Assembly (NCBI RefSeq): GCF_006345805.1
Contig: NW_021834183.1
Location: 1-49,767, forward strand
Length of the DNA stretch: 49,767 nt
Source of the DNA: Octopus sinensis
Taxonomy: Eukaryota
Direction: 5' to 3'
Of this stretch, positions 1 to 49,767 are shown piece after piece. Under the pieces are notes generated by a model. The model searched no databases and was not told where the DNA came from. It saw nothing but the letters and a program-made list of their open reading frames with translations. The translations under genes were made by a program, and so were the position numbers. Position 1 is the first letter of the stretch. Each line of letters starts with the position of its first letter.

Positions 1-446
1 TAGAAATGTCATTTCTTCCAATTTGCCCATCTTCATCAAAATCTGGACTAATTTATTGGCAAAAAACCATTTAAACGAAAAATTAAATTGGCTTTGACCG
101 ACTGATCAGCCCTAGGTGACAGAAGAGAGTATAAATTGACATAATCATCAAAATCCATAAGAGATTTGTCTTCAGTAATGACTTTGAAGATCCTCTCAAC
201 ATAAGGATTAGACTGCCTTCAGAAAACGCGATACCTCAAACTCTGGCAGAGCAGCGAACTGTTCGAAGGTGATTGAGGGATTGCCAGTTTCTTCATTGAT
301 GACGACATCGTTTTTGCCAAATTTTTTAAAAAGACGTAAAATCTCTTCACGATGTAAATAGGTTAGTTCCTGGAGAATAGAAAAAAGGCAGGAACAGTGT
401 ATTCGTTCATTCTTTCCTCGGAAATAGTGCTTTGTTTATTGCCCAT
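1..446 (-). CDS. CIB-family (calcium- and integrin-binding) EF-hand protein, 5' part; gene runs off the window start
   Basis: Manual translation MGNKQSTISEERMNEYT/ELTYLHREEILRLFKKF...LPEFE/SNPYVERIF...FRLN/DFDEDGQIGRNDIS matches the CIB1/CIB2 pattern; GT-AG introns at 370-395 (26 nt), 213-234 (22 nt) and 43-67 (25 nt) restore the frame. Confidence 0.85.
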
Positions 447-664
447 AAAATGCTTAGCAACGACCTGGTCAATCCAAATGGATTAATTTAATAGTTCAAA
501 TTAAAAAATAAACAATTTTTTAAAGTATATTTTTAATTATAAAATTAGTCTTTGTACTTTTATAAATTTCATCGATTTCAGATAGCTCTAGATCTACAAG
601 ATTGATTGATGGTATTTAAATAATAGCAAATATGCAATTTTTTATTTCTAAACATTATTTAATG

Positions 665-1193
665 CAGTGATTCTCAACCGTGGTGCATGGAAAAAAAATT
701 GATACATGCTATTATTTTTATGTTGGGACATAATCCATCTGAAATTTTACAAGTAATGTGACCATTTTTATGTTCCTAGAATTTACCTTTGAGTAATGAT
801 ACGATTTCAAGATTGATTTCAGAAAATGAGAAATATTAAATTGGATTTTTGCTAAATTTAATGAAATTTCCTTTAAATTGCAGGGAAATTTTGTAACTAT
901 GTTTGACGTCAGAGTTACAATAATTGCATTTATTGAGCGATCAACGTAACAAGCTTGATACCTGCTCGCGAGCAGATGTTAGATTATTTTTAATACGCTT
1001 AAACACTGATATTCAGAAACTATTTAAAATGCATGAAAACGAAGGCTCCCATTAAATACTTAGAAAAATATTTTAAGTCTCTAAATTTAATTAAAAGAAA
1101 TAAATAAGTCTGTTTTTTTGGTACACGAAATAACTTGGTTTCGTACATTGACTTTTCTTTTTGGGACACCAAAAAAAAGGTTGAGAATCACTG
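665..1193. mobile_element. hAT-superfamily MITE (529 bp)
   Basis: Perfect 15-bp TIRs CAGTGATTCTCAACC (665-679) / GGTTGAGAATCACTG (1179-1193); perfect 8-bp TSD ATTTAATG (657-664, 1194-1201); no ORF. Confidence 0.93.
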
Positions 1194-1502
1194 ATTTAAT
1201 GGTTATAACCCTTGTTTACAAAAACATCTATCAACAAATCCAAAAAAATCAAAAATGTCCAAAAATTTATCCTTAAAAAATAATTAAAAATTCTTTGTAA
1301 ATATCATTTCAATCTGAGTTGAAAAACCTGGTGAATCAAATAATAGCTTATTTATTCGAATTTTTAAAAATTTTTTGTTATTGAGGTAGTCTCGCCTATT
1401 ATTCGTTGGTAAAAATGCTGAACTAATAAAAAGATAAATTATGTGTATATAACGATCCTTTACACTTTCGCGAAATGATTTTTTCTTCCAATAAATAAAA
1501 AA

Positions 1503-2014
1503 ATGAATTATTTGGTCAATTTTATTAGTTTCCTTTGGATTATTTACTTAATCTATGACAAAATAAAGCAGGAAATTGTTTCAATCGAGATGGGTATTAT
1601 ATCACAAGACCGCCTCAAACAAGTCGAAATCGACAATTTTCACATATAGGATTTACTGGCAAATGAACTTTTGATACTCTATGAAGCGCAGGTGAAAACT
1701 ATTCCGGTGGTTCTGACGTGGGACGGAGATGTCTCCAAATGATCTAAATATTATATGGATAAAATAACAATTAAAAAAGCAACGAGAACTTACATCCAAT
1801 CCGTTGTACTGAAAAGAATTCTCGAAAGTATGTTAATTGAACACAAGCATTGGATGAGGGTATCTGCTACCGACCAAATGTGAAACCGGCATGCTGCCGG
1901 GACACGTCAATTAAAGCTATAACAACTTTGTCTAACGAAGAGATAGAGAGCGAGGAACTAGCAGCAAATTCTCCCCATAAAAAGAAGAGAAAGATCTTCA
2001 ACAATAAAGAGTGA
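1503..2014 (+). pseudogene. Disrupted member of an unnamed ORF family (RTYIQSVxLKRxLESMxIEHK motif)
   Basis: Homologous to ORF 18858-19181; premature TAG at 1647-1649, further stop/frameshift downstream, 18-bp deletion relative to the A' copy. Confidence 0.55.
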
Positions 2015-2159
2015 AAACCTTAATTAAATATTGTAACCTAATTAGTATTTGTCTATTTTTTTTATAAATGGTTTATTTAATTGTAATTCTATCTATCTGA
2101 GTTATTCTCAAATTGTAATTAGAATAAAAGTTTCCATAGTGAGAAGGAAAATATCTAAG

Positions 2160-4196
2160 ATGGAAATAACATATGTCTACACCAAGACACGAGCTGAATT
2201 CGGGAAACAATGTATATTTACAGACAAGAACCCGGAATTGATCGTCGACATTAAACCTAAACCAGAAGACAAAGAAAACTTCATAGAATTCAACTATTGC
2301 GATAAAGAAGTGAACCATATTCCAGAAATATCAGAACACGAAGTATATTTTGCTATTTTTACTGATTTGAAATATTTATTCAAAACAAATCATTTAGGTT
2401 AATACCGAGTCGTTCAGGACGAATAACACCGGAATTAATCACGTTGAGGGTGGCTGGCCAAAGGACATCAATTGTGAGGATGTCGACCAAATACAACGAT
2501 TTAGAAAAAAGGTTGAGAAAGACGACGTTTATATTACATCAGTCCGCAACCTTTCAATTGTATAGTTCTGATTTGAACGTATAGATTATTGAACGACAAA
2601 TAATGAGAAACAATGCCATCGACATTTACGAAGAATATTTTGATGAGTTTGATGGCGATTCTTTCGACGCTCAGCCAGCCGCCAAAATAACAAACTATTT
2701 TCGAGATCCCAATGGAAAGGACCGAGTCGTATCCTCAATTTCCTGGAATCCCACCGATTCTAAAAAAATCGTTGCTGCGTATAGTTTTTTGAGCCCTTCA
2801 TTTACTGCCCCAGTTGCCAATTACGACTCATACGTCTGGGATTTATGTTTTTTTATGTTTTTATTAGATTAGCTTTTCCTAACAACCCGGAGTTTATTCT
2901 CCATACAATATCTCCAATTTTGACGAGTTCCTACTCCCCAAAAGACTCACACGTGATTCTCGGAGGTTGTTATAACGGACAGATTGGTTGTTTATTAAAT
3001 TGACATTAACTAGGATTTTGGGATACCCGAAAAGGGACAACTGCTGTGGACTATACACGGGTAGAAGTGTCGCACAAGGATCCAGTCTATGGGGCAATCT
3101 GGATAAATTCAAAATCCGGAAGCGAGTTTTTCACAGCTTCCACGGATGGATGTGTTTATTGGTGGGACACAAGAAAACTAACGGACCCCGTGGATATAAT
3201 ATATCTTGACACTACTAAAAAACAAGACCCGACGAAAGCTATAGGAGCCACCTGCCTGGAATATGAACCGACTATTGTATAATTTATAAACATTTCAGCC
3301 AACTAAATTTATGGCGGGTTCTGAGATGGGTTCAGTAATTCTCTGCAATCGGAAAGGGAAGACAAACGCAGAAAAAGTCGTCTCCGTGTTTAATGGACAT
3401 AAGGGACCGATTTATTCAGTGAAAAGAAATCCGTTCTATCCCAAACAATTCCTCACTGTGGGCGATTGGACTGCAAGGGTAAAATTCTGAATTGGTTAGA
3501 TGGCAGATATGGTCAGAGGATATCAAGGATTCATCGATCATGTGGACTCAGTATGAATCTAATTAATATGTTAGTAATCACATGAACTTCCTGACAGACG
3601 CCGCATGGAGTCCTACAAGACCGGGAGTTTTCTTTACAACGAGAGTGGACGGTGTCCTTGATGTTTGGGATCTTTGTTTTAATCATTCCAATTGTGCTTT
3701 ATCCATCAAAGTTTTATTTTTACAACAATTTAAAGCTGGACGAGTCGGCTCTGCATAGTTTACAAATAAACGAAACAGGGAAATGTGCTGTTTCAGGATC
3801 GGCTTCGGGAAATATAGCATTTTTGGAGTTTTCAGATTCAATCTACGCACTCCAAAAATCAGAAAAAAATACAGTTTCATCCGTAATCATTGTTTGAACC
3901 CAATCCCGGTAGATATTTGAACGGGAGACAAAACGCATGAAAATATATGAATCCCGGCAAAAAGAACTGAGATTCCGTGCCAAGTCACCTCATTCGACTA
4001 ATCCAGTACATATTTAAATTTTAGTATTTGATAGGATGAGGATATGGCTCAAAATGATGAAGCTGAAGAAATCGACGTGAAAGGCGAATTTTTCAAGTTT
4101 ATAGAATCTGAAAAAAAAATTCGGAACGAAATTGAATCCAAAAAACCACCAAAAATTCGATTTTCCATGGTTTTTAGGTATAGGCGTCATTGTTAG
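2160..4196 (+). CDS. DNAI2: Axonemal dynein intermediate chain 2 (WD40), 11 exons
   Basis: [64 protein letters not shown] motifs; introns 2343-2397, 2560-2584, 2847-2872, 2987-3013, 3277-3298, 3479-3506, 3551-3574, 3711-3735, 3883-3912, 4006-4034. The exact 3' end is less certain. Confidence 0.93.
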
Positions 4197-4735
4197 CACA
4201 CCAATGGGGGCACCAGTACTCGGCCTAGTCAATTCTCAATTGGAGAAAATCACGAAAATAATCCTTAAATAATTAATTCAAATTAATTACTATTAACACT
4301 AGTAATTTAAAATTAAACCGAATTTAAACACATACACTCTGACGTTGTTATGACTCACAACGTGGCTTAAAAACTGCAATTGTATCAATGAGTCATCTCT
4401 TTTCCTAAAATTGTTTTTTCTCTTTGATTTGCTGTTATTGTTCTAAAAAGTTCGTAATAATCGATAAATAATTTGGGTGTCTGCCTTGATACTGTTTCTT
4501 TGATTTTACTAATAACTTTCAGCCGGTCTTTAATTTCTGGTAATCTGGCCTATTATAAAAAGTTGTTTCTTCTTCAATTACTTTTTGTTAAAAAACTTCA
4601 TCGAATTCCTCTGCATATTAATTTTTTTCGGATATTTGGAAGATATTGTGGATTTTTAATTCTTTCAGAATTTATCTCTGGTACAATCCCACCTTTCGCA
4701 AGGGATTTACTTTTTATGTCAACCTGACGGCTCTA

Positions 4736-4976
4736 AACAAATGTGATGGTGGAATACGGCCCAATGCTGTTGGGAGCGTCTTTTGAGGCCTGGCGGACAA
4801 AATTATTTGCCGTTCGGTTCTTCCCGAAGCAAGTATACTTTTAATACCGACCCAACTGGGTGTGGGTGTGAATGGAGCCTGCGAAGTACCCGCTCATAGC
4901 ATATGGCAGTTGCCTTTTTCGGAAAATAATAAAATCCCCTTCTTCCTTATAACTTGATGTCAAAAACGACTTCAAT
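4736..4976 (+). mobile_element. Degenerate CRE-clade-like non-LTR reverse transcriptase fragment (N-terminal RT motifs)
   Basis: Translation KCDGGIRPNAVGSVF*GLADKIICRSVLPEASILLIPTQLGVGVNGACE then, after a frameshift, LDVKNDFN; this resembles the DGGIRPIAVG / QLGVG / DFKNAFN motifs. Confidence 0.7.
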
Positions 4977-5863
4977 TAATTCCTTTTCCTGAACAGTGTG
5001 CGTTGTCGGAATATGCTGCAGGTGCCAACGAATGGATTTCTCGTAGATTTCTCATTGAACTAACATAAGGTGCACTTGTAACTGAAAAATTCTGAAACTA
5101 TGCAGGTTCGCTTAACATCAGTGACAGAACACATATATACATACAATTTCTTACAAAAACAGAGTTGAACCGTGGGAAGGAGTCTTGAACTAGACAAAAA
5201 ATATATGATTATCAAATAAGTGTGGCTAAAACATTGCCAGTGCCTGTCAGCACCTCGAAAGGAAAGAAGCGTGTTTGCCTACATAAATCACTTTGCAAAT
5301 AGAAGAAATAACGACAAGATAAAAAAGATTATTTAGTTAATTGGCACGGATTAAATAATGCCCCAAGTTTGATAATACCCCCATAAAATGTACTAAAATC
5401 AAATTAAAATAACCTGATAATTAATAAAAAAATCTGATAATGGAACTAAGTCGATTTATTCTATTTTGGTAACCAAATTGATGCATTTAGGCTGCAGACA
5501 AACATATTATTATTATTAACCCCCAAGCTTGCATAGCAAACCCAGCACAAACAGTCATAGCTAAATAATCGAATGAAGAAGCCAAAGAAGAAGGAACTGT
5601 CCGTGCTGATCAGTATTAGCCTCCAAATCTTCAATACAGCCTTCCGGATCCACAAAAGGTGGAAAATATCTGGTTCGCCCAGTTCTCATTTGTCAGCCTC
5701 CTACTGTCGCTCATCGCACGTCATTTGTTTTCGGAAGGGTTTTACATGATTAAGATTTTTTCATTGATAATATGATCAGACAAACATAGGTAAAAGATAG
5801 TTTATTTATGATACGTATTTAAAAATAAACAAAACAAAAGGCAATCAGGGACGATCCGCAGAT

Positions 5864-5949
5864 AGAATTGAGAAACTGTTCCCCCTGAGAACGGCTATTG
5901 AGACACGCTCAAAGAGCCGGCTAAGCTCTAGGGGGTTGTTTCTAATTCT
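5864..5949. other. 86-nt imperfect long hairpin in a GC-rich island upstream of MECR (candidate structured RNA)
   Basis: 31 Watson-Crick pairs by eye: AGAATT/AATTCT, AGAAAC/GTTTCT, CCCCCT/AGGGGG, GAG/CTC, CGGCT/AGCCG, TTGAG/CTCAA, loop ACACG. Confidence 0.55.
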
Positions 5950-6069
5950 TCCGAGGTGGCGGCCTCTCTTGGTGAGAAAACAAAGAGTTGATGGTCGAAG
6001 CGTTTATATATAATAGTTCTAATAAATTTTTTGTCCTATTTAAATAATTAGATAAATATATATCACGTG

Positions 6070-7143
6070 ATGGGCATTAGATACTACACCGCACGTTTAT
6101 TCAATAATTTTCTGAGAAATCTCTCCAATGATTCCCGAGCAATTGTTTACCATTCGAGAGGTGACCCCATCAAAGTTACTCAAATCGATAAAATAACTCT
6201 TCCACAAATTGCTCCTGATGAACTCCGTCTGAGAGTGTTGATGGCACCAATCAACCCCTCGGATATAAACATGATTCAGGGACGCTACGGATATCTTCCC
6301 TCCCTTCCGGCGGTGGGCGGAAATGAGTGTGTTGCCGAGATCCAACAGATTGGATCGAATGTAAAAAATTTTAAAATCGGAGACCGAGTCTTTCCTGCTG
6401 AGCCAGGGAATGGGACGTGGTGTGAAAATTGTAATGTAAAGGCCAATGAAATGATCAAACTTCCTGTCGACGTTCCTTCTGTAGTTGGGGCGTCTATTGT
6501 TGTGAATCCATGCAGTGCGTATAGAATGGTCAAGGACTACGGAGCACAACCAGGGGACTATATCATCCAAAATGGAGCAACCTCCGGAGTGGGAGAGGCT
6601 GTTATTCAGTTTGCCAAGATATTCGGAATTCGAACCATTAATGTTGTCCGAGAATCCACTTCTGATGACATTAAGCAGTATCTAACTGATTTGGGTGCCG
6701 ATTATGTAATCACCGACAAGTTTCTCCAGTCGGCAAGTATGAAGAATCTTATCAAAGATGTTGGAGCACCCAAATTGGCCCTGAATTGTGTCGGGGGGCA
6801 GTCGGCCACTGAATTGTTTCGTAATTTGGGTCAAGATGGAGTTATGGTCACTTTTGGTGCCATGGCACGGGATCCTCCAAAAATTCCAATGGGGAAATTC
6901 ATCTTTCTCAATTTGAAGATTGTCGGCTTTTGGCTGACTCAGTGGAAAGCCAAGAATTCAAATAACGAGGCTTATCAGCTTATGTTAGATGATATTTTCA
7001 AGTTCTCCGTTGAAGGCAAGTTCAAGGCTCCTAGATTTAAGTTTTTCGATTTCGACGATTTCAAGACTCCTCTTGAGCAGATTGCAGCTCCTGGCGTCTC
7101 TAAAGGCAAGTCTATGCTTGTCATGGATCGTTCGTACATTTAG
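6070..7143 (+). CDS. MECR: Mitochondrial trans-2-enoyl-CoA/ACP reductase (MDR family), intronless
   Basis: APINPSDINMIQGRYG, VGGNE, VNPCSAYRM, IQNGATSGVG, LALNCVGG motifs; basic N-terminal presequence-like region; ATG at 6070. Confidence 0.93.
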   Translation: MGIRYYTARLFNNFLRNLSNDSRAIVYHSRGDPIKVTQIDKITLPQIAPDELRLRVLMAPINPSDINMIQGRYGYLPSLPAVGGNECVAEIQQIGSNVKNFKIGDRVFPAEPGNGTWCENCNVKANEMIKLPVDVPSVVGASIVVNPCSAYRMVKDYGAQPGDYIIQNGATSGVGEAVIQFAKIFGIRTINVVRESTSDDIKQYLTDLGADYVITDKFLQSASMKNLIKDVGAPKLALNCVGGQSATELFRNLGQDGVMVTFGAMARDPPKIPMGKFIFLNLKIVGFWLTQWKAKNSNNEAYQLMLDDIFKFSVEGKFKAPRFKFFDFDDFKTPLEQIAAPGVSKGKSMLVMDRSYI

Positions 7144-7756
7144 AATTGTTTCTTTTTTACGGACTTTTTGTTTTTATTTTTTAGATATTGAAAATTAAAT
7201 GGGTTTCTCTTATTTATAAATGAACAAAAATAATTAGTTTTATAAAAAAATTATGTCGTTTATAGCTAATATAATTGATTCGATTTTTGATTTCTAAAAT
7301 TTTGGTCTGAAGTTTTCTTTGATTTTATTTGGTCAGCTTTGATCAATCTTTTCAATGTTTATTATAAACGAGTGTCGATAACCCTGAAAGTTGCAATCAC
7401 CATTGTTAAATTTTTGGAACCACTGTGAAAAAATGTATTTTAGTCGATTTTAAATAATAGATATTATTGAAGGTTCCATGCATCGAATATGCAAACCAGA
7501 TTGACAAGTGACGCCGTCATCAGTGAGTGATCTCACTGAGGAACCTGATGTCTTCATCGGCCACACTACAAAAAAAGGGGGACAGGATGGACCAGAGACA
7601 TGTGTCTTCGTTTGGATTAGTTAGTTTGTTGGTAACATTTTCTCATTCTGTCTTGGTCTTTATAAAAAAAATGAAAAATAAAGTGTGGCCGGCCTAAGCG
7701 AGATGTCAACATGTCGTTTACAACTTGCGGTAGGGCTATTTACGATATTGATATTA

Positions 7757-8663
7757 TGTCACATGGGTGATCAGACCCCTATGGGCAACCTGGCCTTTAC
7801 GTGTTTCCATGGCAACTACATAGCAAATATTTACTAAAAGGCCAACTAAAATAAAGGCAATCGATCCGAACTAATGATTGAACTTTAAATTTTTGAGAAA
7901 ATGATGTTTTATATTTGAACCATGCTTGCTTTAAAATAATAAAATTCTTTACAACATTAGCAAATTATAACGTGAATTATTTTTATTTTTGATAATATAA
8001 ATTGCAACATTAGCAAATTATAATTTACATCAAATTTTTTGCAAAGTTTGTAACAACTTTAACTCTAACCTTAACCCAAACCCTAACGTTGGCAAGTGCC
8101 AACATAAATATTCAAAATCTAAACCTAACCTTAACCCAAACCCTAACGTTGGCAAGTGACAACATAAAATTCAAAATCTAAACCCTAACCTTAACCCAAA
8201 CCCTAACGTTGGCAGTGACAACATAAATATTCAAAATCTAACCCTGACCTTAACCCAAACCCTAACTCGAAATTAAATGATGTTTCTGCTGACGATTCTT
8301 CAGACATTTTTTACAAAAATTGGAAGCCTTTTTGGCCAACCGGTGTTTGCTTCGAGCATTCATATCCTCCGGGAATATCCCGATTAACGCTTCCTTAATT
8401 TGATTGTATTCGTTAATATTTCTGACGTAACCCTTAAACCCAGACATCACAAAGTGTGAGTAACCACGCTGTTAAAATTAATATACTTTTGGGTAAGCCA
8501 TTTTTAAAAGATAATTCAAATGTAATTTTAAATTAGAATAATTGATTAATCTACACTCTTCCATATATAAATTGCTATATTCAATATTTAATACCTTCTG
8601 CGGTTTCCATAGAAACACGTAAAAGGACTGGCTGCCCATAGCGACATAGTCGCCCATGTGACA
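7757..8663. mobile_element. Non-autonomous Ginger-like DNA transposon (907 bp, internally deleted)
   Basis: TGTCACATGGG...CCCATGTGACA termini with about 60-bp imperfect TIRs; 5-bp TSD TATTA (7752-7756, 8664-8668); 8275-8590 is homologous to two separated parts (about 20009-20030 and 20934-21117) of the integrase-bearing copy. Confidence 0.85.
8065..8266 (+). repeat. 60-bp minisatellite (about 3.3 units) with telomere-like hexamers and a palindrome
   Basis: Units start at 8065, 8125, 8185, 8244: CTAACCTTAACCCAAACCCTAAC-GTTGGCAAGTG(C/A)CAAC-ATAAATATTCAAAATCTAAAC. Confidence 0.9.
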
Positions 8664-9276
8664 TATTAATACCTGTTCCAATTTTAAACTGGAAAAATAT
8701 TAGAATTGAATTATTATGCCATATCTTCGATCATTACTAAAAAATTTTAAATTGATTACCTAAATTTCATTATTATTTCATTTATTTTCAATACAATCAT
8801 AAGCTTTTCTCAAATTCACTCCAAGAGAAAAACATAGAGACTGCTAATCGCCAAAATTTTCATGTGTTTCAATTATTATTTTTTGTATCGTCACAGTATT
8901 TGCGATATATTGTTTTTCAGTCATCTAAAACAATTTTCGATGTATTTTGACGAAAAATTTTTTATATGCAACATTGACTTTCGTAATTACAAATTATAAG
9001 TTTGTATGTGACATTTTAAGGAGGTATTTTGGTCTTGACATCCAATATTTCGCTGTGGACGTTCTAATTCTTTCATTGTCTTACTTATTTTTGGAAATTT
9101 TACATATAGTGGATAATAAAAAATCTTTCTTTTAATTTACAAAAATTTTGGGAAAACTTCTAAAGAATGGTTCTGTTCATTATCTGAGAGACCGCTTGAT
9201 GGTGCCTTTTTAATCTATTAAAATAATATTTTTTTAATTCTCAAATAAAAAATTTTGCGATCAAAAAATTAAGAAT

Positions 9277-10651
9277 TTAAAGCCACGGATGAACGTTCCA
9301 TTTATTATTTTTAGTGTAAATAAGAAATCCTTTGATAGTAAAAAACATGTACGCCCAATTTTTTACCATCTTTATCTATTTATATTAAATTGTGTCTTTA
9401 CCCTTTTACTTCCTCTGGCAAATCTGAGACATAAGTTATCTTTGGTGATACAAATTTTTCGAATTTCCTCAAAAGTGTAATTCCAAAGAATCATCTCGTT
9501 GTTTAATTTAAATGAAATTCCATTATTTCGACTAACCACAAGCCTTCCAACTCTATTCTCAGTCCAAATTTCTATTCGTGAATATAACCAATAAATCTAC
9601 CCCAGCAATAAGAATATTCCATATTTATAGCCCCAGTAACCGCCTTTATAAAACCAGAAATTATTTGTTTTTTCTCATTCGCATCGATCGCTAGTAATTC
9701 GGTGCGCTTTATTCCCAAGATTGAAGCTTGCTTCATCACAATGCACAAAGAGCTAGACCGTTTAGATGTTAAACTGAATTTGTAATTGTGAATATACCTG
9801 CAATTGATAACAGAGTTACAATTTGTAATCTCATTTGATAAATCTTCAATCTTATGAATGTTGTCGTTAACGTAAACATTTTTATCTGTGACCACAAAAG
9901 AAACAGGTTTCTTAACCACTCCAGCGGGGGTGGCCACTTTCATGTAAAGCCACGTGAGAATATATATTGAAGAGTTGTGAGATAATTGGTTTTTTGAAGA
10001 CTCGATGGAACATATTTTATTATAGAGTTGTGTTTTCGAAGACTCAAAAATGATTCCATGTACCCATTTCGTACAAACTATGGCAAAAGGAAATTTTATC
10101 GTAAGATTTTTTTTTGATTGGGAACTTTCAATAACCAAAACGTTGTCGTGATGGTCAATCACTCGGCACCCAGATAAAGATATTGAAAATTCATTATTTT
10201 TCGCGACTGGAAATTGAGATAAATTCCAGAACAAAACGTTGAAAGCGCGATTTCTTTTTTCCCAGTTCAAATATCTTATGCTCATCACATCAATAATCAC
10301 AAATGTTTTGCAAGCTTTAATGCAGGAAACGGCATCACTGTGGATGCTGTCCTCGATATTGTTTCCATTTACGGAAAGAATCACATCACCAACTTGTAGT
10401 TCTCCTTTTTTTGCAAAGACGCTATTTTTGAAAATTTGGGTGACGATGAGCGGGAAATTTGATTTCGAGCCTCCCTTCACGACAATTCCCAATCCATAAA
10501 ATTTGTCAGGGATAGCGTAAATTTTGCGAATAATAGGTCTGCTCTTTTTGCAAGTCCATTGTAGAGATAATGTCGAATCATGTAACTCGGCATAAGAAAT
10601 TGTCGACTTTGGAAACGCAGACACGATAACTTTACTTTTTAGACAAGTCAT
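9277..10651 (-). CDS. Syntrophin (gamma-like): PDZ, PH-like middle region, C-terminal SU domain; 3 exons
   Basis: PDZ GLGIVVKGG...LQVGDVILSVNG...HSDAV. The ORF-track stop at 9572 is the AG of a 29-nt intron (9572-9600); a 26-nt intron (9376-9401) follows. The spliced tail CWEIWTENRVGRLVV...ILWNYTFEEIR...LCLRF...MFFTIKGFL resembles the SU domain; TAA at 9277-9279. Confidence 0.78.
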
Positions 10652-16163: not shown

Positions 16164-16177
16164 TATTCTTAAGGAGG

Positions 16178-37570: not shown

Positions 37571-37580
37571 CACTTTAGAT

Positions 37581-40075: not shown

Positions 40076-40614
40076 ATGAATTATTTGGTCAATTTTATTA
40101 GTTTCCTATGGATTATTTACTTAATCTATGACAAAATAAAGCAGGAAATTGTTTCAATCGAGATGGGTATTATATCACAAGACCGGCTCAAACAAGTCGA
40201 AATCGACAATTTCCACAAATATGATTTACTGGCAAATGAACTTTTGATACTCTATGAAGCGCAGGTAAAAAATATTCCGGTGGTTCTGACGTGGGACAGA
40301 AATGTCTCCAAATGATCTAAATATTATATGGATAAAATAATCATTGAAAAAGCAACGAGAACCTACATCCAATCCGTTGTACTAAAAAGAATTCTCGAAA
40401 GTATGTTAACTGAACACAAGCATTGGATGAGGGTATCTGGTGACGAATACGCCTCTGCTACCGACCAAATGTGAAACCGGCATGCTGTCGGGACACGTCA
40501 ATTAAAGCTATAACAACTTTGTCTGATGGAGAGATAGAGAGGGAGGAGAGCGAGGAACTAGCAGCAAATTCTCCCCCTAAAAAGAAGAGAAAGATCTTCA
40601 ACAATAAGGAGTGA
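40076..40614 (+). pseudogene. Unnamed ORF family member (less decayed allele/paralog)
   Basis: 79-aa ORF 40076-40315 is open, followed by ...RTYIQSVVLKRILESMLTEHKHWMRVSGDEYASA and a shifted acidic tail ending SPPKKKRKIFNNKE*. Confidence 0.55.
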
Positions 40615-40759
40615 AAACCTTAACTAAATAGTGTAACCTAATTAGTATTTGTCTATTTTTTTATAAATGATTTATTTAATTGTAATTCGATCTATCTGAG
40701 TTATTCTCAAATTGTAATTAGAATAGAAGTTTCCATAGTGAGAAGAAGAAATATCTAAA

Positions 40760-42796
40760 ATGGAAATAACATATGTCTACACCAAGACACGAGCTGAATT
40801 CGGGAAACAGTGTATATTTACAGACAAGAACCCGGAATTGATTGTCGACATTAAACCTAAACCAGAAGACAAAGAAAACTTCATAGAATTCAACTATTGC
40901 GATAAAGAAGTGAACCATATTCCAGAAATATCAGAACACGAAGTATATTTTGCTATTTTTACTGATTTGAAATATTTATTCAAAACAAATCATTTAGGTT
41001 AATACCGAGTCGTTCAGGACGAATAACACCGGAATTAATCACGTTGAGGGTGGCTGGCCAAAGGACATCAATTGTGAGGATGTCGACCAAATACAACGAT
41101 TTAGAAAAAAGGTTGAGAAAGACGACGTTTATATTACATCAGTCCGCAACCTTTCAATTGTATAGTTCTGATTTGAACGTATAGATTATTGAACGACAAA
41201 TAATGAGAAACAATGCCATCGACATTTACGAAGAATATTTTGATGAGTTTGATGGCGATTCTTTCGACGCTCAGCCAGCCGCCAAAATAACAAACTATTT
41301 TCGAGATCCCAATGGAAAGGACCGAGTCGTATCCTCAATTTCCTGGAATCCCACCGATTCTAAAAAAATCGTTGCTGCGTATAGTTTTTTGAGCCCTTCA
41401 TTTACTGCCCCAGTTGCCAATTACGACTCATACGTCTGGGATTTATGTTTTTTTATGTTTTTATTAGATTAGCTTTTCCTAACAACCCGGAGTTTATTCT
41501 CCATACAATATCTCCAATTTTGACGAGTTCCTACTCCCCAAAAGACTCACACGTGATTCTCGGAGGTTGTTATAACGGACAGATTGGTTGTTTATTAAAT
41601 TGACATTAACTAGGATTTTGGGATACCCGAAAAGGGACAACTGCTGTGGACTATACACGGGTAGAAGTGTCGCACAAGGATCCAGTCTATGGGGCAATCT
41701 GGATAAATTCAAAATCCGGAAGCGAGTTTTTCACAGCTTCCACGGATGGATGTGTTTATTGGTGGGACACAAGAAAACTAACGGACCCCGTGGATATAAT
41801 ATATCTTGACACTACTAAAAAACAAGACCCGACGAAAGCTATAGGAGCCACCTGCCTGGAATATGAACCGACTATTGTATAATTTATAAACATTTCAGCC
41901 AACTAAATTTATGGCGGGTTCTGAGATGGGTTCAGTAATTCTCTGCAATCGGAAAGGGAAGACAAACGCAGAAAAAGTCGTCTCCGTGTTTAATGGACAT
42001 AAGGGACCGATTTATTCAGTGAAAAGAAATCCGTTCTATCCCAAACAATTCCTCACTGTGGGCGATTGGACTGCAAGGGTAAAATTCTGAATTGGTTAGA
42101 TGGCAGATATGGTCAGAGGATATCAAGGATTCATCGATCATGTGGACTCAGTATGAATCTAATTAATATGTTAGTAATCACATGAACTTCCTGACAGACG
42201 CCGCATGGAGTCCTACAAGACCGGGAGTTTTCTTTACAACGAGAGTGGACGGTGTCCTTGATGTTTGGGATCTTTGTTTTAATCATTCCAATTGTGCTTT
42301 ATCCATCAAAGTTTTATTTTTACAACAATTTAAAGCTGGACGAGTCGGCTCTGCATAGTTTACAAATAAACGAAACAGGGAAATGTGCTGTTTCAGGATC
42401 GGCTTCGGGAAATATAGCATTTTTGGAGTTTTCAGATTCAATCTACGCACTCCAAAAATCAGAAAAAAATACAGTTTCATCCGTAATCATTGTTTGAACC
42501 CAATCCCGGTAGATATTTGAACGGGAGACAAAACGCATGAAAATATATGAATCCCGGCAAAAAGAACTGAGATTCCGTGCCAAGTCACCTCATTCGACTA
42601 ATCCAGTACATATTTAAATTTTAGTATTTGATAGGATGAGGATATGGCTCAAAATGATGAAGCTGAAGAAATCGACGTGAAAGGCGAATTTTTCAAGTTT
42701 ATAGAATCTGAAAAAAAAATTCGGAACGAAATTGAATCCAAAAAACCACCAAAAATTCGATTTTCCATGGTTTTTAGGTATAGGCGTCATTGTTAG
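40760..42796 (+). CDS. DNAI2: Axonemal dynein intermediate chain 2, duplicate
   Basis: Copy of 2160-4196 at offset 38600. Confidence 0.92.
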
Positions 42797-43335
42797 CACA
42801 CCAATGGGGGCACCAGTACTCGGCCTAGTCAATTCTCAATTGGAGAAAATCACGAAAATAATCCTTAAATAATTAATTCAAATTAATTACTATTAACACT
42901 AGTAATTTAAAATTAAACCGAATTTAAACACATACACTCTGACGTTGTTATGACTCACAACGTGGCTTAAAAACTGCAATTGTATCAATGAGTCATCTCT
43001 TTTCCTAAAATTGTTTTTTCTCTTTGATTTGCTGTTATTGTTCTAAAAAGTTCGTAATAATCGATAAATAATTTGGGTGTCTGCCTTGATACTGTTTCTT
43101 TGATTTTACTAATAACTTTCAGCCGGTCTTTAATTTCTGGTAATCTGGCCTATTATAAAAAGTTGTTTCTTCTTCAATTACTTTTTGTTAAAAAACTTCA
43201 TCGAATTCCTCTGCATATTAATTTTTTTCGGATATTTGGAAGATATTGTGGATTTTTAATTCTTTCAGAATTTATCTCTGGTACAATCCCACCTTTCGCA
43301 AGGGATTTACTTTTTATGTCAACCTGACGGCTCTA

Positions 43336-43576
43336 AACAAATGTGATGGTGGAATACGGCCCAATGCTGTTGGGAGCGTCTTTTGAGGCCTGGCGGACAA
43401 AATTATTTGCCGTTCGGTTCTTCCCGAAGCAAGTATACTTTTAATACCGACCCAACTGGGTGTGGGTGTGAATGGAGCCTGCGAAGTACCCGCTCATAGC
43501 ATATGGCAGTTGCCTTTTTCGGAAAATAATAAAATCCCCTTCTTCCTTATAACTTGATGTCAAAAACGACTTCAAT
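43336..43576 (+). mobile_element. CRE-like RT remnant, duplicate
   Basis: Copy of 4736-4976. Confidence 0.68.
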
Positions 43577-44463
43577 TAATTCCTTTTCCTGAACAGTGTG
43601 CGTTGTCGGAATATGCTGCAGGTGCCAACGAATGGATTTCTCGTAGATTTCTCATTGAACTAACATAAGGTGCACTTGTAACTGAAAAATTCTGAAACTA
43701 TGCAGGTTCGCTTAACATCAGTGACAGAACACATATATACATACAATTTCTTACAAAAACAGAGTTGAACCGTGGGAAGGAGTCTTGAACTAGACAAAAA
43801 ATATATGATTATCAAATAAGTGTGGCTAAAACATTGCCAGTGCCTGTCAGCACCTCGAAAGGAAAGAAGCGTGTTTGCCTACATAAATCACTTTGCAAAT
43901 AGAAGAAATAACGACAAGATAAAAAAGATTATTTAGTTAATTGGCACGGATTAAATAATGCCCCAAGTTTGATAATACCCCCATAAAATGTACTAAAATC
44001 AAATTAAAATAACCTGATAATTAATAAAAAAATCTGATAATGGAACTAAGTCGATTTATTCTATTTTGGTAACCAAATTGATGCATTTAGGCTGCAGACA
44101 AACATATTATTATTATTAACCCCCAAGCTTGCATAGCAAACCCAGCACAAACAGTCATAGCTAAATAATCGAATGAAGAAGCCAAAGAAGAAGGAACTGT
44201 CCGTGCTGATCAGTATTAGCCTCCAAATCTTCAATACAGCCTTCCGGATCCACAAAAGGTGGAAAATATCTGGTTCGCCCAGTTCTCATTTGTCAGCCTC
44301 CTACTGTCGCTCATCGCACGTCATTTGTTTTCGGAAGGGTTTTACATGATTAAGATTTTTTCATTGATAATATGATCAGACAAACATAGGTAAAAGATAG
44401 TTTATTTATGATACGTATTTAAAAATAAACAAAACAAAAGGCAATCAGGGACGATCCGCAGAT

Positions 44464-44549
44464 AGAATTGAGAAACTGTTCCCCCTGAGAACGGCTATTG
44501 AGACACGCTCAAAGAGCCGGCTAAGCTCTAGGGGGTTGTTTCTAATTCT
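44464..44549. other. Long hairpin, duplicate
   Basis: Copy of 5864-5949. Confidence 0.55.
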
Positions 44550-44669
44550 TCCGAGGTGGCGGCCTCTCTTGGTGAGAAAACAAAGAGTTGATGGTCGAAG
44601 CGTTTATATATAATAGTTCTAATAAATTTTTTGTCCTATTTAAATAATTAGATAAATATATATCACGTG

Positions 44670-45743
44670 ATGGGCATTAGATACTACACCGCACGTTTAT
44701 TCAATAATTTTCTGAGAAATCTCTCCAATGATTCCCGAGCAATTGTTTACCATTCGAGAGGTGACCCCATCAAAGTTACTCAAATCGATAAAATAACTCT
44801 TCCACAAATTGCTCCTGATGAACTCCGTCTGAGAGTGTTGATGGCACCAATCAACCCCTCGGATATAAACATGATTCAGGGACGCTACGGATATCTTCCC
44901 TCCCTTCCGGCGGTGGGCGGAAATGAGTGTGTTGCCGAGATCCAACAGATTGGATCGAATGTAAAAAATTTTAAAATCGGAGACCGAGTCTTTCCTGCTG
45001 AGCCAGGGAATGGGACGTGGTGTGAAAATTGTAATGTAAAGGCCAATGAAATGATCAAACTTCCTGTCGACGTTCCTTCTGTAGTTGGGGCGTCTATTGT
45101 TGTGAATCCATGCAGTGCGTATAGAATGGTCAAGGACTACGGAGCACAACCAGGGGACTATATCATCCAAAATGGAGCAACCTCCGGAGTGGGAGAGGCT
45201 GTTATTCAGTTTGCCAAGATATTCGGAATTCGAACCATTAATGTTGTCCGAGAATCCACTTCTGATGACATTAAGCAGTATCTAACTGATTTGGGTGCCG
45301 ATTATGTAATCACCGACAAGTTTCTCCAGTCGGCAAGTATGAAGAATCTTATCAAAGATGTTGGAGCACCCAAATTGGCCCTGAATTGTGTCGGGGGGCA
45401 GTCGGCCACTGAATTGTTTCGTAATTTGGGTCAAGATGGAGTTATGGTCACTTTTGGTGCCATGGCACGGGATCCTCCAAAAATTCCAATGGGGAAATTC
45501 ATCTTTCTCAATTTGAAGATTGTCGGCTTTTGGCTGACTCAGTGGAAAGCCAAGAATTCAAATAACGAGGCTTATCAGCTTATGTTAGATGATATTTTCA
45601 AGTTCTCCGTTGAAGGCAAGTTCAAGGCTCCTAGATTTAAGTTTTTCGATTTCGACGATTTCAAGACTCCTCTTGAGCAGATTGCAGCTCCTGGCGTCTC
45701 TAAAGGCAAGTCTATGCTTGTCATGGATCGTTCGTACATTTAG
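44670..45743 (+). CDS. MECR: Mitochondrial trans-2-enoyl-CoA reductase, duplicate
   Basis: Same protein as 6070-7143. Confidence 0.93.
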   Translation: MGIRYYTARLFNNFLRNLSNDSRAIVYHSRGDPIKVTQIDKITLPQIAPDELRLRVLMAPINPSDINMIQGRYGYLPSLPAVGGNECVAEIQQIGSNVKNFKIGDRVFPAEPGNGTWCENCNVKANEMIKLPVDVPSVVGASIVVNPCSAYRMVKDYGAQPGDYIIQNGATSGVGEAVIQFAKIFGIRTINVVRESTSDDIKQYLTDLGADYVITDKFLQSASMKNLIKDVGAPKLALNCVGGQSATELFRNLGQDGVMVTFGAMARDPPKIPMGKFIFLNLKIVGFWLTQWKAKNSNNEAYQLMLDDIFKFSVEGKFKAPRFKFFDFDDFKTPLEQIAAPGVSKGKSMLVMDRSYI

Positions 45744-46364
45744 AATTGTTTCTTTTTTACGGACTTTTTGTTTTTATTTTTTAGATATTGAAAATTAAAT
45801 GGGTTTCTCTTATTTATAAATGAACAAAAATAATTAGTTTTATAAAAAAATTATGTCGTTTATAGCTAATATAATTGATTCGATTTTTGATTTCTAAAAT
45901 TTTGGTCTGAAGTTTTCTTTGATTTTATTTGGTCAGCTTTGATCAATCTTTTCAATGTTTATTATAAACGAGTGTCGATAACCCTGAAAGTTGCAATCAC
46001 CATTGTTAAATTTTTGGAACCACTGTGAAAAAATGTATTTTAGTCGATTTTAAATAATAGATATTATTGAAGGTTCCATGCATCGAATATGCAAACCAGA
46101 TTGACAAGTGACGCCGTCATCAGTGAGTGATCTCACTGAGGAACCTGATGTCTTCATCGGCCACACTACAAAAAAAGGGGGACAGGATGGACCAGAGACA
46201 TGTGTCTTCGTTTGGATTAGTTAGTTTGTTGGTAACATTTTCTCATTCTGTCTTGGTCTTTATAAAAAAAATAAAAAAATGAAAAATAAAGTGTGGCCGG
46301 CCTAAGCGAGATGTCAACATGTCGTTTACAACTTGCGGTAGGGCTATTTACGATATTGATATTA

Positions 46365-47271
46365 TGTCACATGGGTGATCAGACCCCTATGGGCAACCTG
46401 GCCTTTACGTGTTTCCATGGCAACTACATAGCAAATATTTACTAAAAGGCCAACTAAAATAAAGGCAATCGATCCGAACTAATGATTGAACTTTAAATTT
46501 TTGAGAAAATGATGTTTTATATTTGAACCATGCTTGCTTTAAAATAATAAAATTCTTTACAACATTAGCAAATTATAACGTGAATTATTTTTATTTTTGA
46601 TAATATAAATTGCAACATTAGCAAATTATAATTTACATCAAATTTTTTGCAAAGTTTGTAACAACTTTAACTCTAACCTTAACCCAAACCCTAACGTTGG
46701 CAAGTGCCAACATAAATATTCAAAATCTAAACCTAACCTTAACCCAAACCCTAACGTTGGCAAGTGACAACATAAAATTCAAAATCTAAACCCTAACCTT
46801 AACCCAAACCCTAACGTTGGCAGTGACAACATAAATATTCAAAATCTAACCCTGACCTTAACCCAAACCCTAACTCGAAATTAAATGATGTTTCTGCTGA
46901 CGATTCTTCAGACATTTTTTACAAAAATTGGAAGCCTTTTTGGCCAACCGGTGTTTGCTTCGAGCATTCATATCCTCCGGGAATATCCCGATTAACGCTT
47001 CCTTAATTTGATTGTATTCGTTAATATTTCTGACGTAACCCTTAAACCCAGACATCACAAAGTGTGAGTAACCACGCTGTTAAAATTAATATACTTTTGG
47101 GTAAGCCATTTTTAAAAGATAATTCAAATGTAATTTTAAATTAGAATAATTGATTAATCTACACTCTTCCATATATAAATTGCTATATTCAATATTTAAT
47201 ACCTTCTGCGGTTTCCATAGAAACACGTAAAAGGACTGGCTGCCCATAGCGACATAGTCGCCCATGTGACA
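46365..47271. mobile_element. Non-autonomous Ginger-like element with minisatellite, duplicate
   Basis: Same termini and TATTA TSD as 7757-8663; minisatellite at about 46673-46874. Confidence 0.85.
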
Positions 47272-47884
47272 TATTAATACCTGTTCCAATTTTAAACTGG
47301 AAAAATATTAGAATTGAATTATTATGCCATATCTTCGATCATTACTAAAAAATTTTAAATTGATTACCTAAATTTCATTATTATTTCATTTATTTTCAAT
47401 ACAATCATAAGCTTTTCTCAAATTCACTCCAAGAGAAAAACATAGAGACTGCTAATCGCCAAAATTTTCATGTGTTTCAATTATTATTTTTTGTATCGTC
47501 ACAGTATTTGCGATATATTGTTTTTCAGTCATCTAAAACAATTTTCGATGTATTTTGACGAAAAATTTTTTATATGCAACATTGACTTTCGTAATTACAA
47601 ATTATAAGTTTGTATGTGACATTTTAAGGAGGTATTTTGGTCTTGACATCCAATATTTCGCTGTGGACGTTCTAATTCTTTCATTGTCTTACTTATTTTT
47701 GGAAATTTTACATATAGTGGATAATAAAAAATCTTTCTTTTAATTTACAAAAATTTTGGGAAAACTTCTAAAGAATGGTTCTGTTCATTATCTGAGAGAC
47801 CGCTTGATGGTGCCTTTTTAATCTATTAAAATAATATTTTTTTAATTCTCAAATAAAAAATTTTGCGATCAAAAAATTAAGAAT

Positions 47885-49259
47885 TTAAAGCCACGGATGA
47901 ACGTTCCATTTATTATTTTTAGTGTAAATAAGAAATCCTTTGATAGTAAAAAACATGTACGCCCAATTTTTTACCATCTTTATCTATTTATATTAAATTG
48001 TGTCTTTACCCTTTTACTTCCTCTGGCAAATCTGAGACATAAGTTATCTTTGGTGATACAAATTTTTCGAATTTCCTCAAAAGTGTAATTCCAAAGAATC
48101 ATCTCGTTGTTTAATTTAAATGAAATTCCATTATTTCGACTAACCACAAGCCTTCCAACTCTATTCTCAGTCCAAATTTCTATTCGTGAATATAACCAAT
48201 AAATCTACCCCAGCAATAAGAATATTCCATATTTATAGCCCCAGTAACCGCCTTTATAAAACCAGAAATTATTTGTTTTTTCTCATTCGCATCGATCGCT
48301 AGTAATTCGGTGCGCTTTATTCCCAAGATTGAAGCTTGCTTCATCACAATGCACAAAGAGCTAGACCGTTTAGATGTTAAACTGAATTTGTAATTGTGAA
48401 TATACCTGCAATTGATAACAGAGTTACAATTTGTAATCTCATTTGATAAATCTTCAATCTTATGAATGTTGTCGTTAACGTAAACATTTTTATCTGTGAC
48501 CACAAAAGAAACAGGTTTCTTAACCACTCCAGCGGGGGTGGCCACTTTCATGTAAAGCCACGTGAGAATATATATTGAAGAGTTGTGAGATAATTGGTTT
48601 TTTGAAGACTCGATGGAACATATTTTATTATAGAGTTGTGTTTTCGAAGACTCAAAAATGATTCCATGTACCCATTTCGTACAAACTATGGCAAAAGGAA
48701 ATTTTATCGTAAGATTTTTTTTTGATTGGGAACTTTCAATAACCAAAACGTTGTCGTGATGGTCAATCACTCGGCACCCAGATAAAGATATTGAAAATTC
48801 ATTATTTTTCGCGACTGGAAATTGAGATAAATTCCAGAACAAAACGTTGAAAGCGCGATTTCTTTTTTCCCAGTTCAAATATCTTATGCTCATCACATCA
48901 ATAATCACAAATGTTTTGCAAGCTTTAATGCAGGAAACGGCATCACTGTGGATGCTGTCCTCGATATTGTTTCCATTTACGGAAAGAATCACATCACCAA
49001 CTTGTAGTTCTCCTTTTTTTGCAAAGACGCTATTTTTGAAAATTTGGGTGACGATGAGCGGGAAATTTGATTTCGAGCCTCCCTTCACGACAATTCCCAA
49101 TCCATAAAATTTGTCAGGGATAGCGTAAATTTTGCGAATAATAGGTCTGCTCTTTTTGCAAGTCCATTGTAGAGATAATGTCGAATCATGTAACTCGGCA
49201 TAAGAAATTGTCGACTTTGGAAACGCAGACACGATAACTTTACTTTTTAGACAAGTCAT
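47885..49259 (-). CDS. Syntrophin, duplicate
   Basis: Copy of 9277-10651 at offset 38608; introns 48180-48208 and 47984-48009. Confidence 0.78.
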
Positions 49260-49767
49260 GTTTTACGATAAAATTCAACAGACGCATTTAAATATGCGAA
49301 AAATTAAATCAATGGCGATTAACATTGAATAACGTTTTTCATCTAAAGAATGTGATTAGAGAATTACAACAGAACATTAATGGGAATCATGATTCTTTAG
49401 AACTGCGACATTATTTTTAAACTCGACATTTTTTGATTTTACAATCAATTACCTTTATAATAACCACAAATAATTTAGTGAGACCATTTACTACATTTTA
49501 AATACAATTTATTGATCAAAGAGTATTTATAGCAATCTTTCAAGGTAACTCGCTTGCTATCCGCGGTGTGGCCACTGGCGAATCCTAATTTCGATAAACA
49601 CACTTCAATAAAACAGAACCTACATCAGTATAAATTACAATTTTTAAATTACGAAATAGTTTGTAGACGATATTTATCACGTGATTTTGAAATTAATGAA
49701 ATAATCTCGAAAAGCTCATATTTTTCTTATTTTATTAGATAATAGTTCCTACCATTTGATCAGGCTC

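What the first reader, a model, noticed from the sequence alone, without database searches (positions are those of the whole stretch)
1..49767. 11.2-kb terminal direct repeat: a 38.6-kb circular molecule or a tandem array
Seen: the window start (mid-CIB gene) recurs at 38572 and the last base matches 11159, so the sequence can be closed into a circle of about 38.6 kb on which the CIB gene is complete. Known: untrimmed long-read assemblies of circular DNA show such end overlaps, and developmentally formed extrachromosomal circular DNA has been reported in Dicyema. Inference: this may be a gene-bearing circle (CIB, DNAI2, MECR, syntrophin, innexin, H3, H4), a chromosomal tandem duplication, or two haplotypes concatenated by the assembler.
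Basis: partly seen in the sequence, partly recalled or inferred. Interest (0 to 1): 0.7.

Follow-up and report, generated by a model that had tools for sequence, protein, structure and literature searches.

The report
Looped parasite contig, probably not circular
The 11-kb repeat at both ends of this contig is real, but the contig is a thinly supported second assembly of a chromosomal region of a dicyemid parasite hidden in an octopus genome assembly, so it more likely reflects a local head-to-tail duplication or an assembly loop joining two alleles than a free circular DNA.

Summary
Bases 1-11159 recur at 38572-49767 (99.27%), and the window is a whole record: VCDQ01013488.1, 49,767 bp, in the Octopus sinensis PacBio assembly GCA_006345805.1. 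The DNA is dicyemid, not octopus.

The structure is nested: A-j-B-C-B'-D-A'. B and B' (9.7 kb: innexin, LINE pieces, H4) differ only by consensus-type errors.

The block D-A-j-innexin (14.6 kb) also lies inside a 300-kb linear contig of the same assembly, with unrelated flanks on both sides. The three assembled copies show only two sequence versions. A carries version a. A' equals the 300-kb contig (version b), with 2 differences in 11 kb.

Versions a and b are joined through an error-rich tract (30.2-38.7 kb). That tract contains a head-to-tail junction B'->D with 7-of-8 microhomology (chance about 7e-4).

My ranking:
- Chromosomal head-to-tail duplication on a poorly covered haplotype, unit 38.6 or 22.8 kb: about 0.45.
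- False assembly loop through near-identical LINE/histone repeats: about 0.35.
- Extrachromosomal circle: about 0.1. Published Dicyema circles are sub-kb to kb and non-coding.

Read-level data are needed to decide.

The parts
1..11159 (.). A: left copy of the terminal repeat, sequence version 'a'. It holds the 5' part of CIB (1-~484, minus strand), DNAI2 (2160-4017, plus), MECR-like (6070-7143, plus) and the PDZ/syntrophin-like gene (9572-10651, minus).
1385..2243 (.). Divergent patch between CIB and DNAI2. A differs here from both A' (39958-40843) and the 300-kb contig by 34 substitutions plus 18-, 9- and 1-bp indels. This is a real variant, not error.
11160..11270 (.). j: 111-bp continuation of the shared block between A and the innexin 3' flank. 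It is also present in the 300-kb contig.
11271..20980 (.). B: 9.7-kb repeat copy 1. It holds innexin (11311-12393, minus), the LINE endonuclease part (14237-15438, minus), H4 (15855-16163, minus), the LINE RT part (16173-17924, minus), an H2A/H2B-like remnant (18262-18736), and the start of element E (20924-20980).
20981..27103 (.). C: spacer between B and B'. It holds the rest of element E, a pogo/Tc5 transposase (21688-22645, minus), H3 (23348-23758, minus), a 1-kb 5'-truncated LINE (23779-24790), and a 2.2-kb internally deleted LINE whose 5' end is at 27103. The stretch 22998-27103 is dispersed repeat, 94-99.5% identical to copies on other contigs.
27104..36799 (.). B': 9.7-kb repeat copy 2. 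It is identical to B for the first 3.1 kb and then differs almost only by single missing bases. It is the poorer copy. It ends inside element E at E position 57.
30261..38724 (.). Error-rich tract with 2-10 indel events per kb, bracketed by clean sequence. It spans the rest of B', all of D and the first 150 bp of A', which indicates a thinly supported bridge.
36792..36799 (.). Head-to-tail junction B'->D. GGGCATTC (end of the E fragment) is joined to TTTCTGATT (start of D). The 300-kb contig reads GGGCTTTC|TTTCTGATT at the same place, giving 7-of-8 microhomology.
36800..38571 (.). D: 1.8 kb present once in the window and also in the 300-kb contig. It holds the 3' part of CIB. The window copy carries about 12 one-base indels relative to the 300-kb contig.
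38572..49767 (.). A': right copy of the terminal repeat, sequence version 'b'. From 38725 onward it differs from the 300-kb contig at only 2 positions in 11 kb. Genes as in A (CIB complete across D/A', DNAI2 from 40760, MECR 44670-45743, PDZ 48180-49259).
27097..27104 (.). Junction C->B'. The 5' end of a LINE copy abuts the innexin 3' flank, with AAAATTT-type microhomology to the j->B junction.
12807..12808 (.). Right-hand breakpoint of collinearity with the 300-kb contig. Beyond it the 300-kb contig carries a different LINE and Tc1/mariner copies.

Best explanation
The contig is chromosomal DNA of a dicyemid parasite that was co-sequenced with its octopus host. It is a second, poorly covered assembly path through a locus that is also present in a 300-kb contig. 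The path loops back on itself because some molecules carry a head-to-tail junction: the end of a 9.7-kb innexin/LINE/histone segment (B') is joined by microhomology to the start of D, upstream of the CIB-DNAI2-MECR-syntrophin block. The most likely origin is a replication- or repair-based tandem-type segmental duplication in transposon-rich DNA, on a minor or poorly covered haplotype (version a). The unit is D-A-j-B-C-B' (38.6 kb) or, if the assembler mispaired the two indistinguishable B copies, D-A-j-B (22.8 kb). After the junction the assembler continued with reads of the commoner version b. That is why the right-hand copy A' is identical to the 300-kb contig while the left-hand copy A is version a. 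Shown directly: the repeats, the two versions, the chromosomal context, the error-rich bridge and the microhomology. Inferred: that the junction is a tandem duplication rather than a circle, and that the change from a to b is an assembler hop.
For: The window is a whole contig. The block D-A-j-innexin (14.6 kb) lies at about 260.2-274.9 kb of the 300,011-bp contig VCDQ01006889.1, with unrelated flanks on both sides. Only two sequence versions occur among the three assembled copies: A, I and I' are version a, and A' and the 300-kb contig are version b. B and B' differ only by singleton missing bases when judged against five other copies. The error-rich tract 30.2-38.7 kb is bracketed by clean sequence. 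The B'->D junction has 7-of-8 microhomology with the sequence that precedes D in the 300-kb contig, with a simulated chance of 7e-4. This is the expected signature of a head-to-tail junction made on a chromosome that had the 300-kb contig's arrangement upstream of D. The D. japonicum genome is 49% repeats, rich in LINE ORF2 copies, 1.24% heterozygous, and needed removal of allelic scaffolds (PMC6736024).
Against: No read-level or independent-assembly evidence for any of the four window-specific junctions could be obtained. A duplication on haplotype a predicts an a-type second copy, but A' is b-type, so an assembler hop or an inter-homologue event must be assumed. The contig never leaves the repeat into unique flanks, so a tandem array cannot be told apart from a circle. 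The link C->B' runs through 3-4 kb of dispersed repeat at 98.6-99.5% identity, which could be a false join.
Confidence: 0.45

Rival explanations
1. This is an assembly artefact. A is single-copy in the genome, and its two copies in the contig are simply the two alleles. The loop was created by a false join inside near-identical LINE/histone repeats (22998-27103), or by mis-threading the 9.7-kb B repeat, at low parasite coverage. The end of the contig was then extended with reads that also built the 300-kb contig. B may still be truly duplicated on either side of D-A-j.
For: There are two versions among three copies, and A' equals the 300-kb contig. The bridge 30.2-38.7 kb is error-rich, B' is poorer than B, and D is poorer than its copy in the 300-kb contig. 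The bridge ends at A coordinate ~150, next to where the contig itself starts, as expected for two sides of a coverage gap in one linear haplotype. Repeats of 3-5 kb at 97-99.7% identity are common in and between the parasite contigs. The contig is unplaced and redundant with a larger contig.
Against: The B'->D junction has non-random microhomology, so at least that join exists in real molecules. Together with the confirmed j->B join, it already places B-type sequence on both sides of D-A-j. A false join needs a second copy of the same LINE subfamily exactly at the left edge of B', and also a lack of spanning reads.
Confidence: 0.35
2. This is an extrachromosomal circular DNA of 38.6 kb (or 22.8 kb). 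It was excised from the chromosome and closed by microhomology-mediated joining of the E fragment at the end of B' to the start of D. It carries CIB, DNAI2, MECR, syntrophin-like, innexin and histone genes.
For: The sequence closes into a circle with the CIB gene intact. The closing junction has microhomology, as circle junctions often do. Its apparent low support fits a minority molecule. Dicyemids are reported to make circular DNAs during development (PMC6543705).
Against: The same block is chromosomal in a 300-kb contig. The two end copies are different versions, which an untrimmed overlap of one circle would not give. Reported Dicyema circles have a median length of 702 bp, contain no conserved domains other than mitochondrial ones, and are not tens of kb with nuclear genes. 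Nothing in the sequence separates a circle from a tandem repeat.
Confidence: 0.1
3. These are two paralogous chromosomal loci. The 14.6-kb block was copied to a second locus (dispersed segmental duplication), and the window mixes these loci.
For: The window and the 300-kb contig have different flanks on both sides of the shared block.
Against: A' and the 300-kb contig differ at 2 positions in 11 kb, and only two versions exist in all. That fits alleles plus redundancy better than three independent copies.
Confidence: 0.05

Closest known systems
Microhomology-mediated tandem segmental duplication (replication-based template switching, or end joining; from general knowledge)
   Same: Direct orientation, a head-to-tail junction with a few bases of microhomology to the sequence upstream of the duplicated segment, nested duplications, and a transposon-rich setting.
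   Different: Copy number, depth and unique flanks were not seen. The second copy carries the other allele's sequence.
False duplications and retained haplotigs in noisy long-read assemblies of heterozygous genomes (from general knowledge; allelic-scaffold removal was needed for D. japonicum, PMC6736024)
   Same: A small unplaced contig redundant with a larger one, copies corresponding to two alleles, and a low-quality joining stretch.
   Different: The copies are joined through 27 kb of other sequence and a junction with non-random microhomology, not simply placed side by side.
Untrimmed end overlap of a circular long-read contig (organelle, plasmid, virus)
   Same: The repeat reaches both contig ends, and one period gives a closed sequence with an intact gene across the join.
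   Different: The ends are not the same sequence (a 4% patch). The content is nuclear genes that are also found in a 300-kb linear contig.
Dicyema extrachromosomal circular DNAs (Noto et al. 2003 as cited in, and 'circular contigs' of, Zverkov et al. 2019, PMC6543705)
   Same: Same animal group, and inferred from end-overlapping contigs.
   Different: Those are about 0.3-2 kb (median 702 bp above 500 bp) and non-coding or mitochondrial. This would be 20-40 kb with seven nuclear genes and transposons.

Membership tests
Dicyema extrachromosomal circular DNA | Size in the sub-kb to few-kb range | tested here: not met
   The period is 38,571 bp (or 22,752 bp), against a median of 702 bp in PMC6543705.
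Dicyema extrachromosomal circular DNA | Non-coding or mitochondrial content | tested here: not met
   It holds CIB, DNAI2, MECR-like, PDZ, innexin, H3, H4 and transposons.
Dicyema extrachromosomal circular DNA | Physical circularity (reads that wrap around, exonuclease resistance) | not testable with these tools
Untrimmed circular contig | The two end copies are the same sequence apart from random errors | tested here: not met
   34 substitutions and 3 indels are clustered in 860 bp. A is version a and A' is version b.
Untrimmed circular contig | The sequence is not embedded in linear flanks elsewhere | tested here: not met
   The 14.6-kb block lies inside the 300,011-bp contig VCDQ01006889.1, with other flanks.
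Tandem segmental duplication | Direct repeats joined by a head-to-tail junction | tested here: met
   A/A' and B/B' are direct repeats. The B'->D junction joins a downstream point back to an upstream one with 7-of-8 microhomology, P about 7e-4.
Tandem segmental duplication | Array bounded by unique flanks, with doubled depth | not testable with these tools
   The contig ends inside the repeat, and no reads are available.
False duplication / haplotig | Copies correspond to the alleles of one locus, one of them identical to the primary contig | tested here: met
   There are two versions among three copies. A' differs from the 300-kb contig at 2 positions in 11 kb.
False duplication / haplotig | The join is weakly supported or passes through repeats | tested here: inconclusive
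   An error-rich tract at 30.2-38.7 kb and a 3-4-kb dispersed repeat at C->B' fit this feature. The B'->D junction, however, looks like a real DNA join.
Dicyemid genome (origin of the contig) | Closest relatives are dicyemid; compact genes with very short introns; about 37% G+C; host is Octopus sinensis | tested here: met
   The innexin's best named hit is Dicyema koshidai Innexin1 (53%, E 3e-111), and no other cephalopod orthologues appear. G+C is 36.9% against 36.7% for D. japonicum, which was collected from O. sinensis. A 55-nt intron is present in DNAI2 and MECR is intronless.

The most novel reading that the evidence does not exclude
A dicyemid makes a large (22.8- or 38.6-kb) gene-bearing extrachromosomal circle from a transposon- and histone-rich chromosomal region, closed by microhomology. 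This would extend the reported developmental circle formation from sub-kb non-coding pieces to multi-gene segments.
Probability: 0.08. Interest if true: 0.75.

Novelty: new member of a known kind. Interest (0 to 1): 0.25.

Why it matters
For the finding itself, the value is mainly cautionary. End-overlapping contigs are used to call circular DNA in dicyemids, and this case shows that such an overlap can arise from chromosomal duplications and allelic redundancy. If the head-to-tail junction proves real, it is a concrete example of microhomology-mediated rearrangement in the LINE- and histone-rich DNA of a dicyemid. It would also be a defined target (one junction, one PCR) for asking whether large circles exist in these animals. 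There is a practical consequence too. The public Octopus sinensis assembly contains parasite contigs hundreds of kb long, and their genes are annotated as octopus genes.

Tried and rejected
1. Exact-product look-ups for the innexin ORF and the long pogo ORF found nothing. The pogo gene as called occurs only on this contig.

2. I tried to extend the view of the 300-kb contig further left of D through the spliced 116-aa DNAI2 fragment. So I could see only 2.1 kb to the left and 7.8 kb to the right of the shared block.

3. I tested the idea that the sequence left of D in the 300-kb contig is a simple LINE insertion with a target-site duplication, beyond which B' would resume. There is no second copy of the 8-mer and no B'-like sequence within 2.1 kb, and the stretch is a mosaic of transposon fragments. 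This remains unresolved.

4. I first took the exact coincidence between the end of homology to the 300-kb contig and the B'->D junction as support for the junction. I rejected this as circular, because homology would end there whether or not the junction is real.

5. I first read the messy bases at 1-150 as a poor contig start. The three-way alignment shows the errors are in the A' copy (38611-38724).

6. A search of the large protein collection with the ORF that crosses the B'->D junction gave no hit, so no independent data set could be brought in.

7. I tested whether another parasite contig (VCDQ01011424.1) is a large palindrome, as a sign of assembly artefacts. It is not.

8. The right-hand breakpoint at 12807 shows no clean insertion signature. 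The 92-bp shared piece is a LINE-end fragment.

9. Rfam and tRNA scans of the window found nothing.

10. The assembly's methods paper is not held in the library.
Full report
**Observation**

A self-comparison of the window confirms the terminal direct repeat. Bases 1-11159 (A) match 38572-49767 (A') at 99.27% over 11,201 columns, a period of 38,571 bp. The window is a complete public record: VCDQ01013488.1, contig length 49,767, in assembly GCA_006345805.1. That assembly is the PacBio + Hi-C assembly of Octopus sinensis (Li et al. 2020, as cited in bioRxiv 10.1101/2023.05.16.540928). The repeat therefore truly reaches both ends of a contig.

- CIB on the minus strand across the D/A' boundary (E 2e-19 to CIB1)
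- DNAI2 (E 2e-36)
- an MECR-type enoyl reductase, a PDZ protein, innexin, H4 and H3

**Origin**

The DNA is not octopus.
- The innexin's best named relative is Dicyema koshidai Innexin1 (53% identity, E 3e-111).
- The only other strong hits are two proteins labelled Octopus sinensis on other contigs. No orthologue from any other cephalopod appears.
- G+C is 36.9%, against 36.7% for Dicyema japonicum, which was collected from O. sinensis (PMC6736024).
- Genes are tightly packed. MECR is intronless and DNAI2 has a 55-nt intron.

The contig is parasite DNA carried into the host assembly.

**Anatomy**

The window is not just a terminal repeat. Its layout is A(1-11159) - j(111 bp) - B(11271-20980) - C(20981-27103) - B'(27104-36799) - D(36800-38571) - A'(38572-49767).
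- B and B' (9.7 kb) hold innexin, a LINE endonuclease part, H4, a LINE RT part and a histone remnant.
- C holds a pogo/Tc5 transposase, H3, a 1-kb truncated LINE and a 2.2-kb internally deleted LINE.

**What the differences between copies say**

B and B' are identical for 3.1 kb. After that they differ by 34 indels, nearly all of one base, and about 11 substitutions. In the 1-kb LINE piece, five other copies can serve as outgroups. There, every B/B' difference is a singleton, mostly a missing base: five in B' and one in B. These are long-read consensus errors, so B and B' are effectively the same sequence and B' is the poorer copy.

A and A' behave differently. They are identical over 2244-11159 except for one 8-bp unit. 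In 1385-2243 they differ by 34 substitutions and by 18-, 9- and 1-bp indels. That is a real variant.

**The same locus in a 300-kb contig**

Contig VCDQ01006889.1 (300,011 bp) carries D-A-j and the first 1,537 bp of B (innexin). This block is collinear for 14.6 kb, at about 260.2-274.9 kb of that record. On the left of D and on the right of window position 12807, that contig holds unrelated, transposon-rich sequence. It includes a LINE with a 749-aa RT ORF and Tc1/mariner copies. The genes of the terminal repeat are therefore chromosomal.

A three-way alignment shows only two sequence versions among the three assembled copies.
- Version a is found in A and in both window copies of the innexin region. 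Those two copies are identical to each other and differ from the 300-kb contig at seven substitutions.
- Version b is found in A' and the 300-kb contig. From 38725 to 49767 they differ at 2 positions in 11 kb.

**A thin bridge**

I scored each part of the right half of the window against its best reference. Error-like events form one continuous tract from about 30.2 to 38.7 kb, at 2-10 indel events per kb. There are none in 27.1-30.2 kb and almost none in 38.7-49.8 kb. The tract covers the repeat-rich part of B'. It also covers D and the first 150 bp of A', which are not repetitive and are clean in the 300-kb contig. A frameshift at 37026 splits an ORF that is intact there.

I infer that few reads support this stretch. 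It is the stretch that links version-a sequence to version-b sequence. It ends at A coordinate ~150, next to the point where the contig itself begins.

**Junctions**

Four joins are specific to the window:
- innexin->rest of B (12807|12808)
- B->C (20980|20981)
- C->B' (27103|27104)
- B'->D (36799|36800)

B->C is simply a short repeated element (E, also at 8306-8570) running on. B' is cut at E position 57 and joined to D. The last eight bases before the join (GGGCATTC) match the eight bases that precede D in the 300-kb contig (GGGCTTTC) at 7 of 8 positions. For random joins between these sequences that has a probability of about 7e-4. This is the signature of a head-to-tail junction made by microhomology on a chromosome that had the 300-kb contig's arrangement upstream of D. 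It argues that this join exists in real molecules and is not a ligation chimera.

C->B' is the 5' end of a LINE copy abutting the innexin 3' flank. The 3-4 kb to its left (H3 module, 1-kb LINE, 2.2-kb LINE) is 98.6-99.5% identical to copies on other contigs. Such 3-5-kb modules are common in the parasite contigs. A false join there is possible.

One earlier argument of mine must be withdrawn. Homology to the 300-kb contig ends exactly at B'->D, but that carries no weight, because it would end there whether or not the junction is real.

**Interpretation**

Taken at face value, the four junctions force a cyclic order (D A j B C B'). That means a tandem array, a circle, or an assembly loop.

I rank a chromosomal head-to-tail duplication on a poorly covered haplotype first (about 0.45). 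It uses every junction as real, explains the microhomology, and fits a transposon-rich, heterozygous genome (49% repeats, 1.24% heterozygosity, allelic scaffolds had to be removed). It requires the assembler to have continued past the junction with the commoner version-b reads. The unit size is uncertain. B is 9.7 kb and its copies cannot be told apart, so the junction could close D-A-j-B (22.8 kb) rather than the full 38.6 kb.

Second is a false loop (about 0.35). In this reading A is single-copy, its two copies are the two alleles, and the path was closed wrongly inside the LINE/histone block or by mis-threading B at low coverage.

A circle (about 0.1) is not excluded by sequence, but several points count against it:
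- The block is chromosomal.
- The two ends are different versions.
- The circular DNAs described for Dicyema are small (median 702 bp for those above 500 bp) and contain no conserved domains other than mitochondrial ones (PMC6543705).

**Limits**

I could not reach reads or an independent assembly. Exact-product look-ups found these genes only in this assembly. A search with the ORF crossing the junction found nothing. The tool that fetches contigs does not accept spliced products, so only 2.1 kb to the left and 7.8 kb to the right of the shared block could be seen in the 300-kb contig.

**Verdict**

This is an ordinary kind of feature (duplication and/or assembly redundancy in a contaminant contig), with a small chance of being something unusual. 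Mapping the existing long reads would settle it.

Noticed in passing
whole window; loci L003/L012 (VCDQ01006889.1, 300 kb), L008 (VCDQ01013128.1, 428 kb), L010 (164 kb), L006/L007 (100 kb): The public Octopus sinensis assembly (GenBank and RefSeq copies) contains dicyemid parasite contigs up to hundreds of kb. Proteins named 'innexin unc-9-like' and 'innexin unc-7-like [Octopus sinensis]' have a Dicyema innexin as nearest named relative and no other cephalopod orthologue in the hit list, so they are probably parasite genes annotated as octopus.
   Followed up: partly
window 16163-16173, 31998-32008, 23758-23779; L006 ~9940-10001; L002 ~629-756: The same LINE 3' end (...CTTAACTAATAAATTTTTCC) lies 10 nt upstream of the H4 start codon and 20 nt upstream of the H3 start codon. 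It also lies next to H3 or H4 on two other contigs. The identical H3 protein occurs on 8 contigs. This suggests a histone-associated LINE family, either through site-specific insertion or through histone genes carried along by 3' transduction.
   Followed up: partly
window 15705-15854 and 23198-23347 (3' flanks of H4 and H3, minus strand): No canonical histone 3' stem-loop is present (Rfam gave no hit, and no GC-rich 6-bp hairpin was found). The flanks are AT-rich with AATAAA-like signals, so these histone mRNAs may be polyadenylated.
   Followed up: partly
window 11311-16512 (and the B' equivalent): The public gene models fuse H4 with innexin into one 509-aa product, and make a 175-aa H4-containing product in B'. 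These are likely mis-annotations of compact parasite genes by a pipeline tuned to the host.
   Followed up: no
window 8061-8266 and 8306-8570; 20924-21117; 36743-36799: A ~61-bp tandem repeat (about 3.4 copies) lies next to a ~265-bp element E. A second E copy with a 70-bp deletion spans the B/C boundary, and a 57-bp stub ends B' at the junction with D.
   Followed up: partly
window 49688 (A coordinate 11080): At this one site A' agrees with A and not with the 300-kb contig, just 79 bp before the contig end and just before the next a/b differences (in j and in innexin). It could be an error in the 300-kb contig or a hint of a recombinant.
   Followed up: no
window 24874-27103; L002 1-629; L011 967-2011; L005 2430-4173: A 2.2-kb internally deleted LINE derivative (5' region joined directly to the last ~400 bp) recurs on several contigs at 93-99% identity, as if it were a mobilised non-autonomous subfamily.
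   Followed up: no
window 1781-1866 / 40351-40459 versus 19050-19179 / 34876-35011 (inverted): The divergent a/b patch contains a short repeat that is about 82-84% similar, in inverted orientation, to a piece of B and B'.
   Followed up: no
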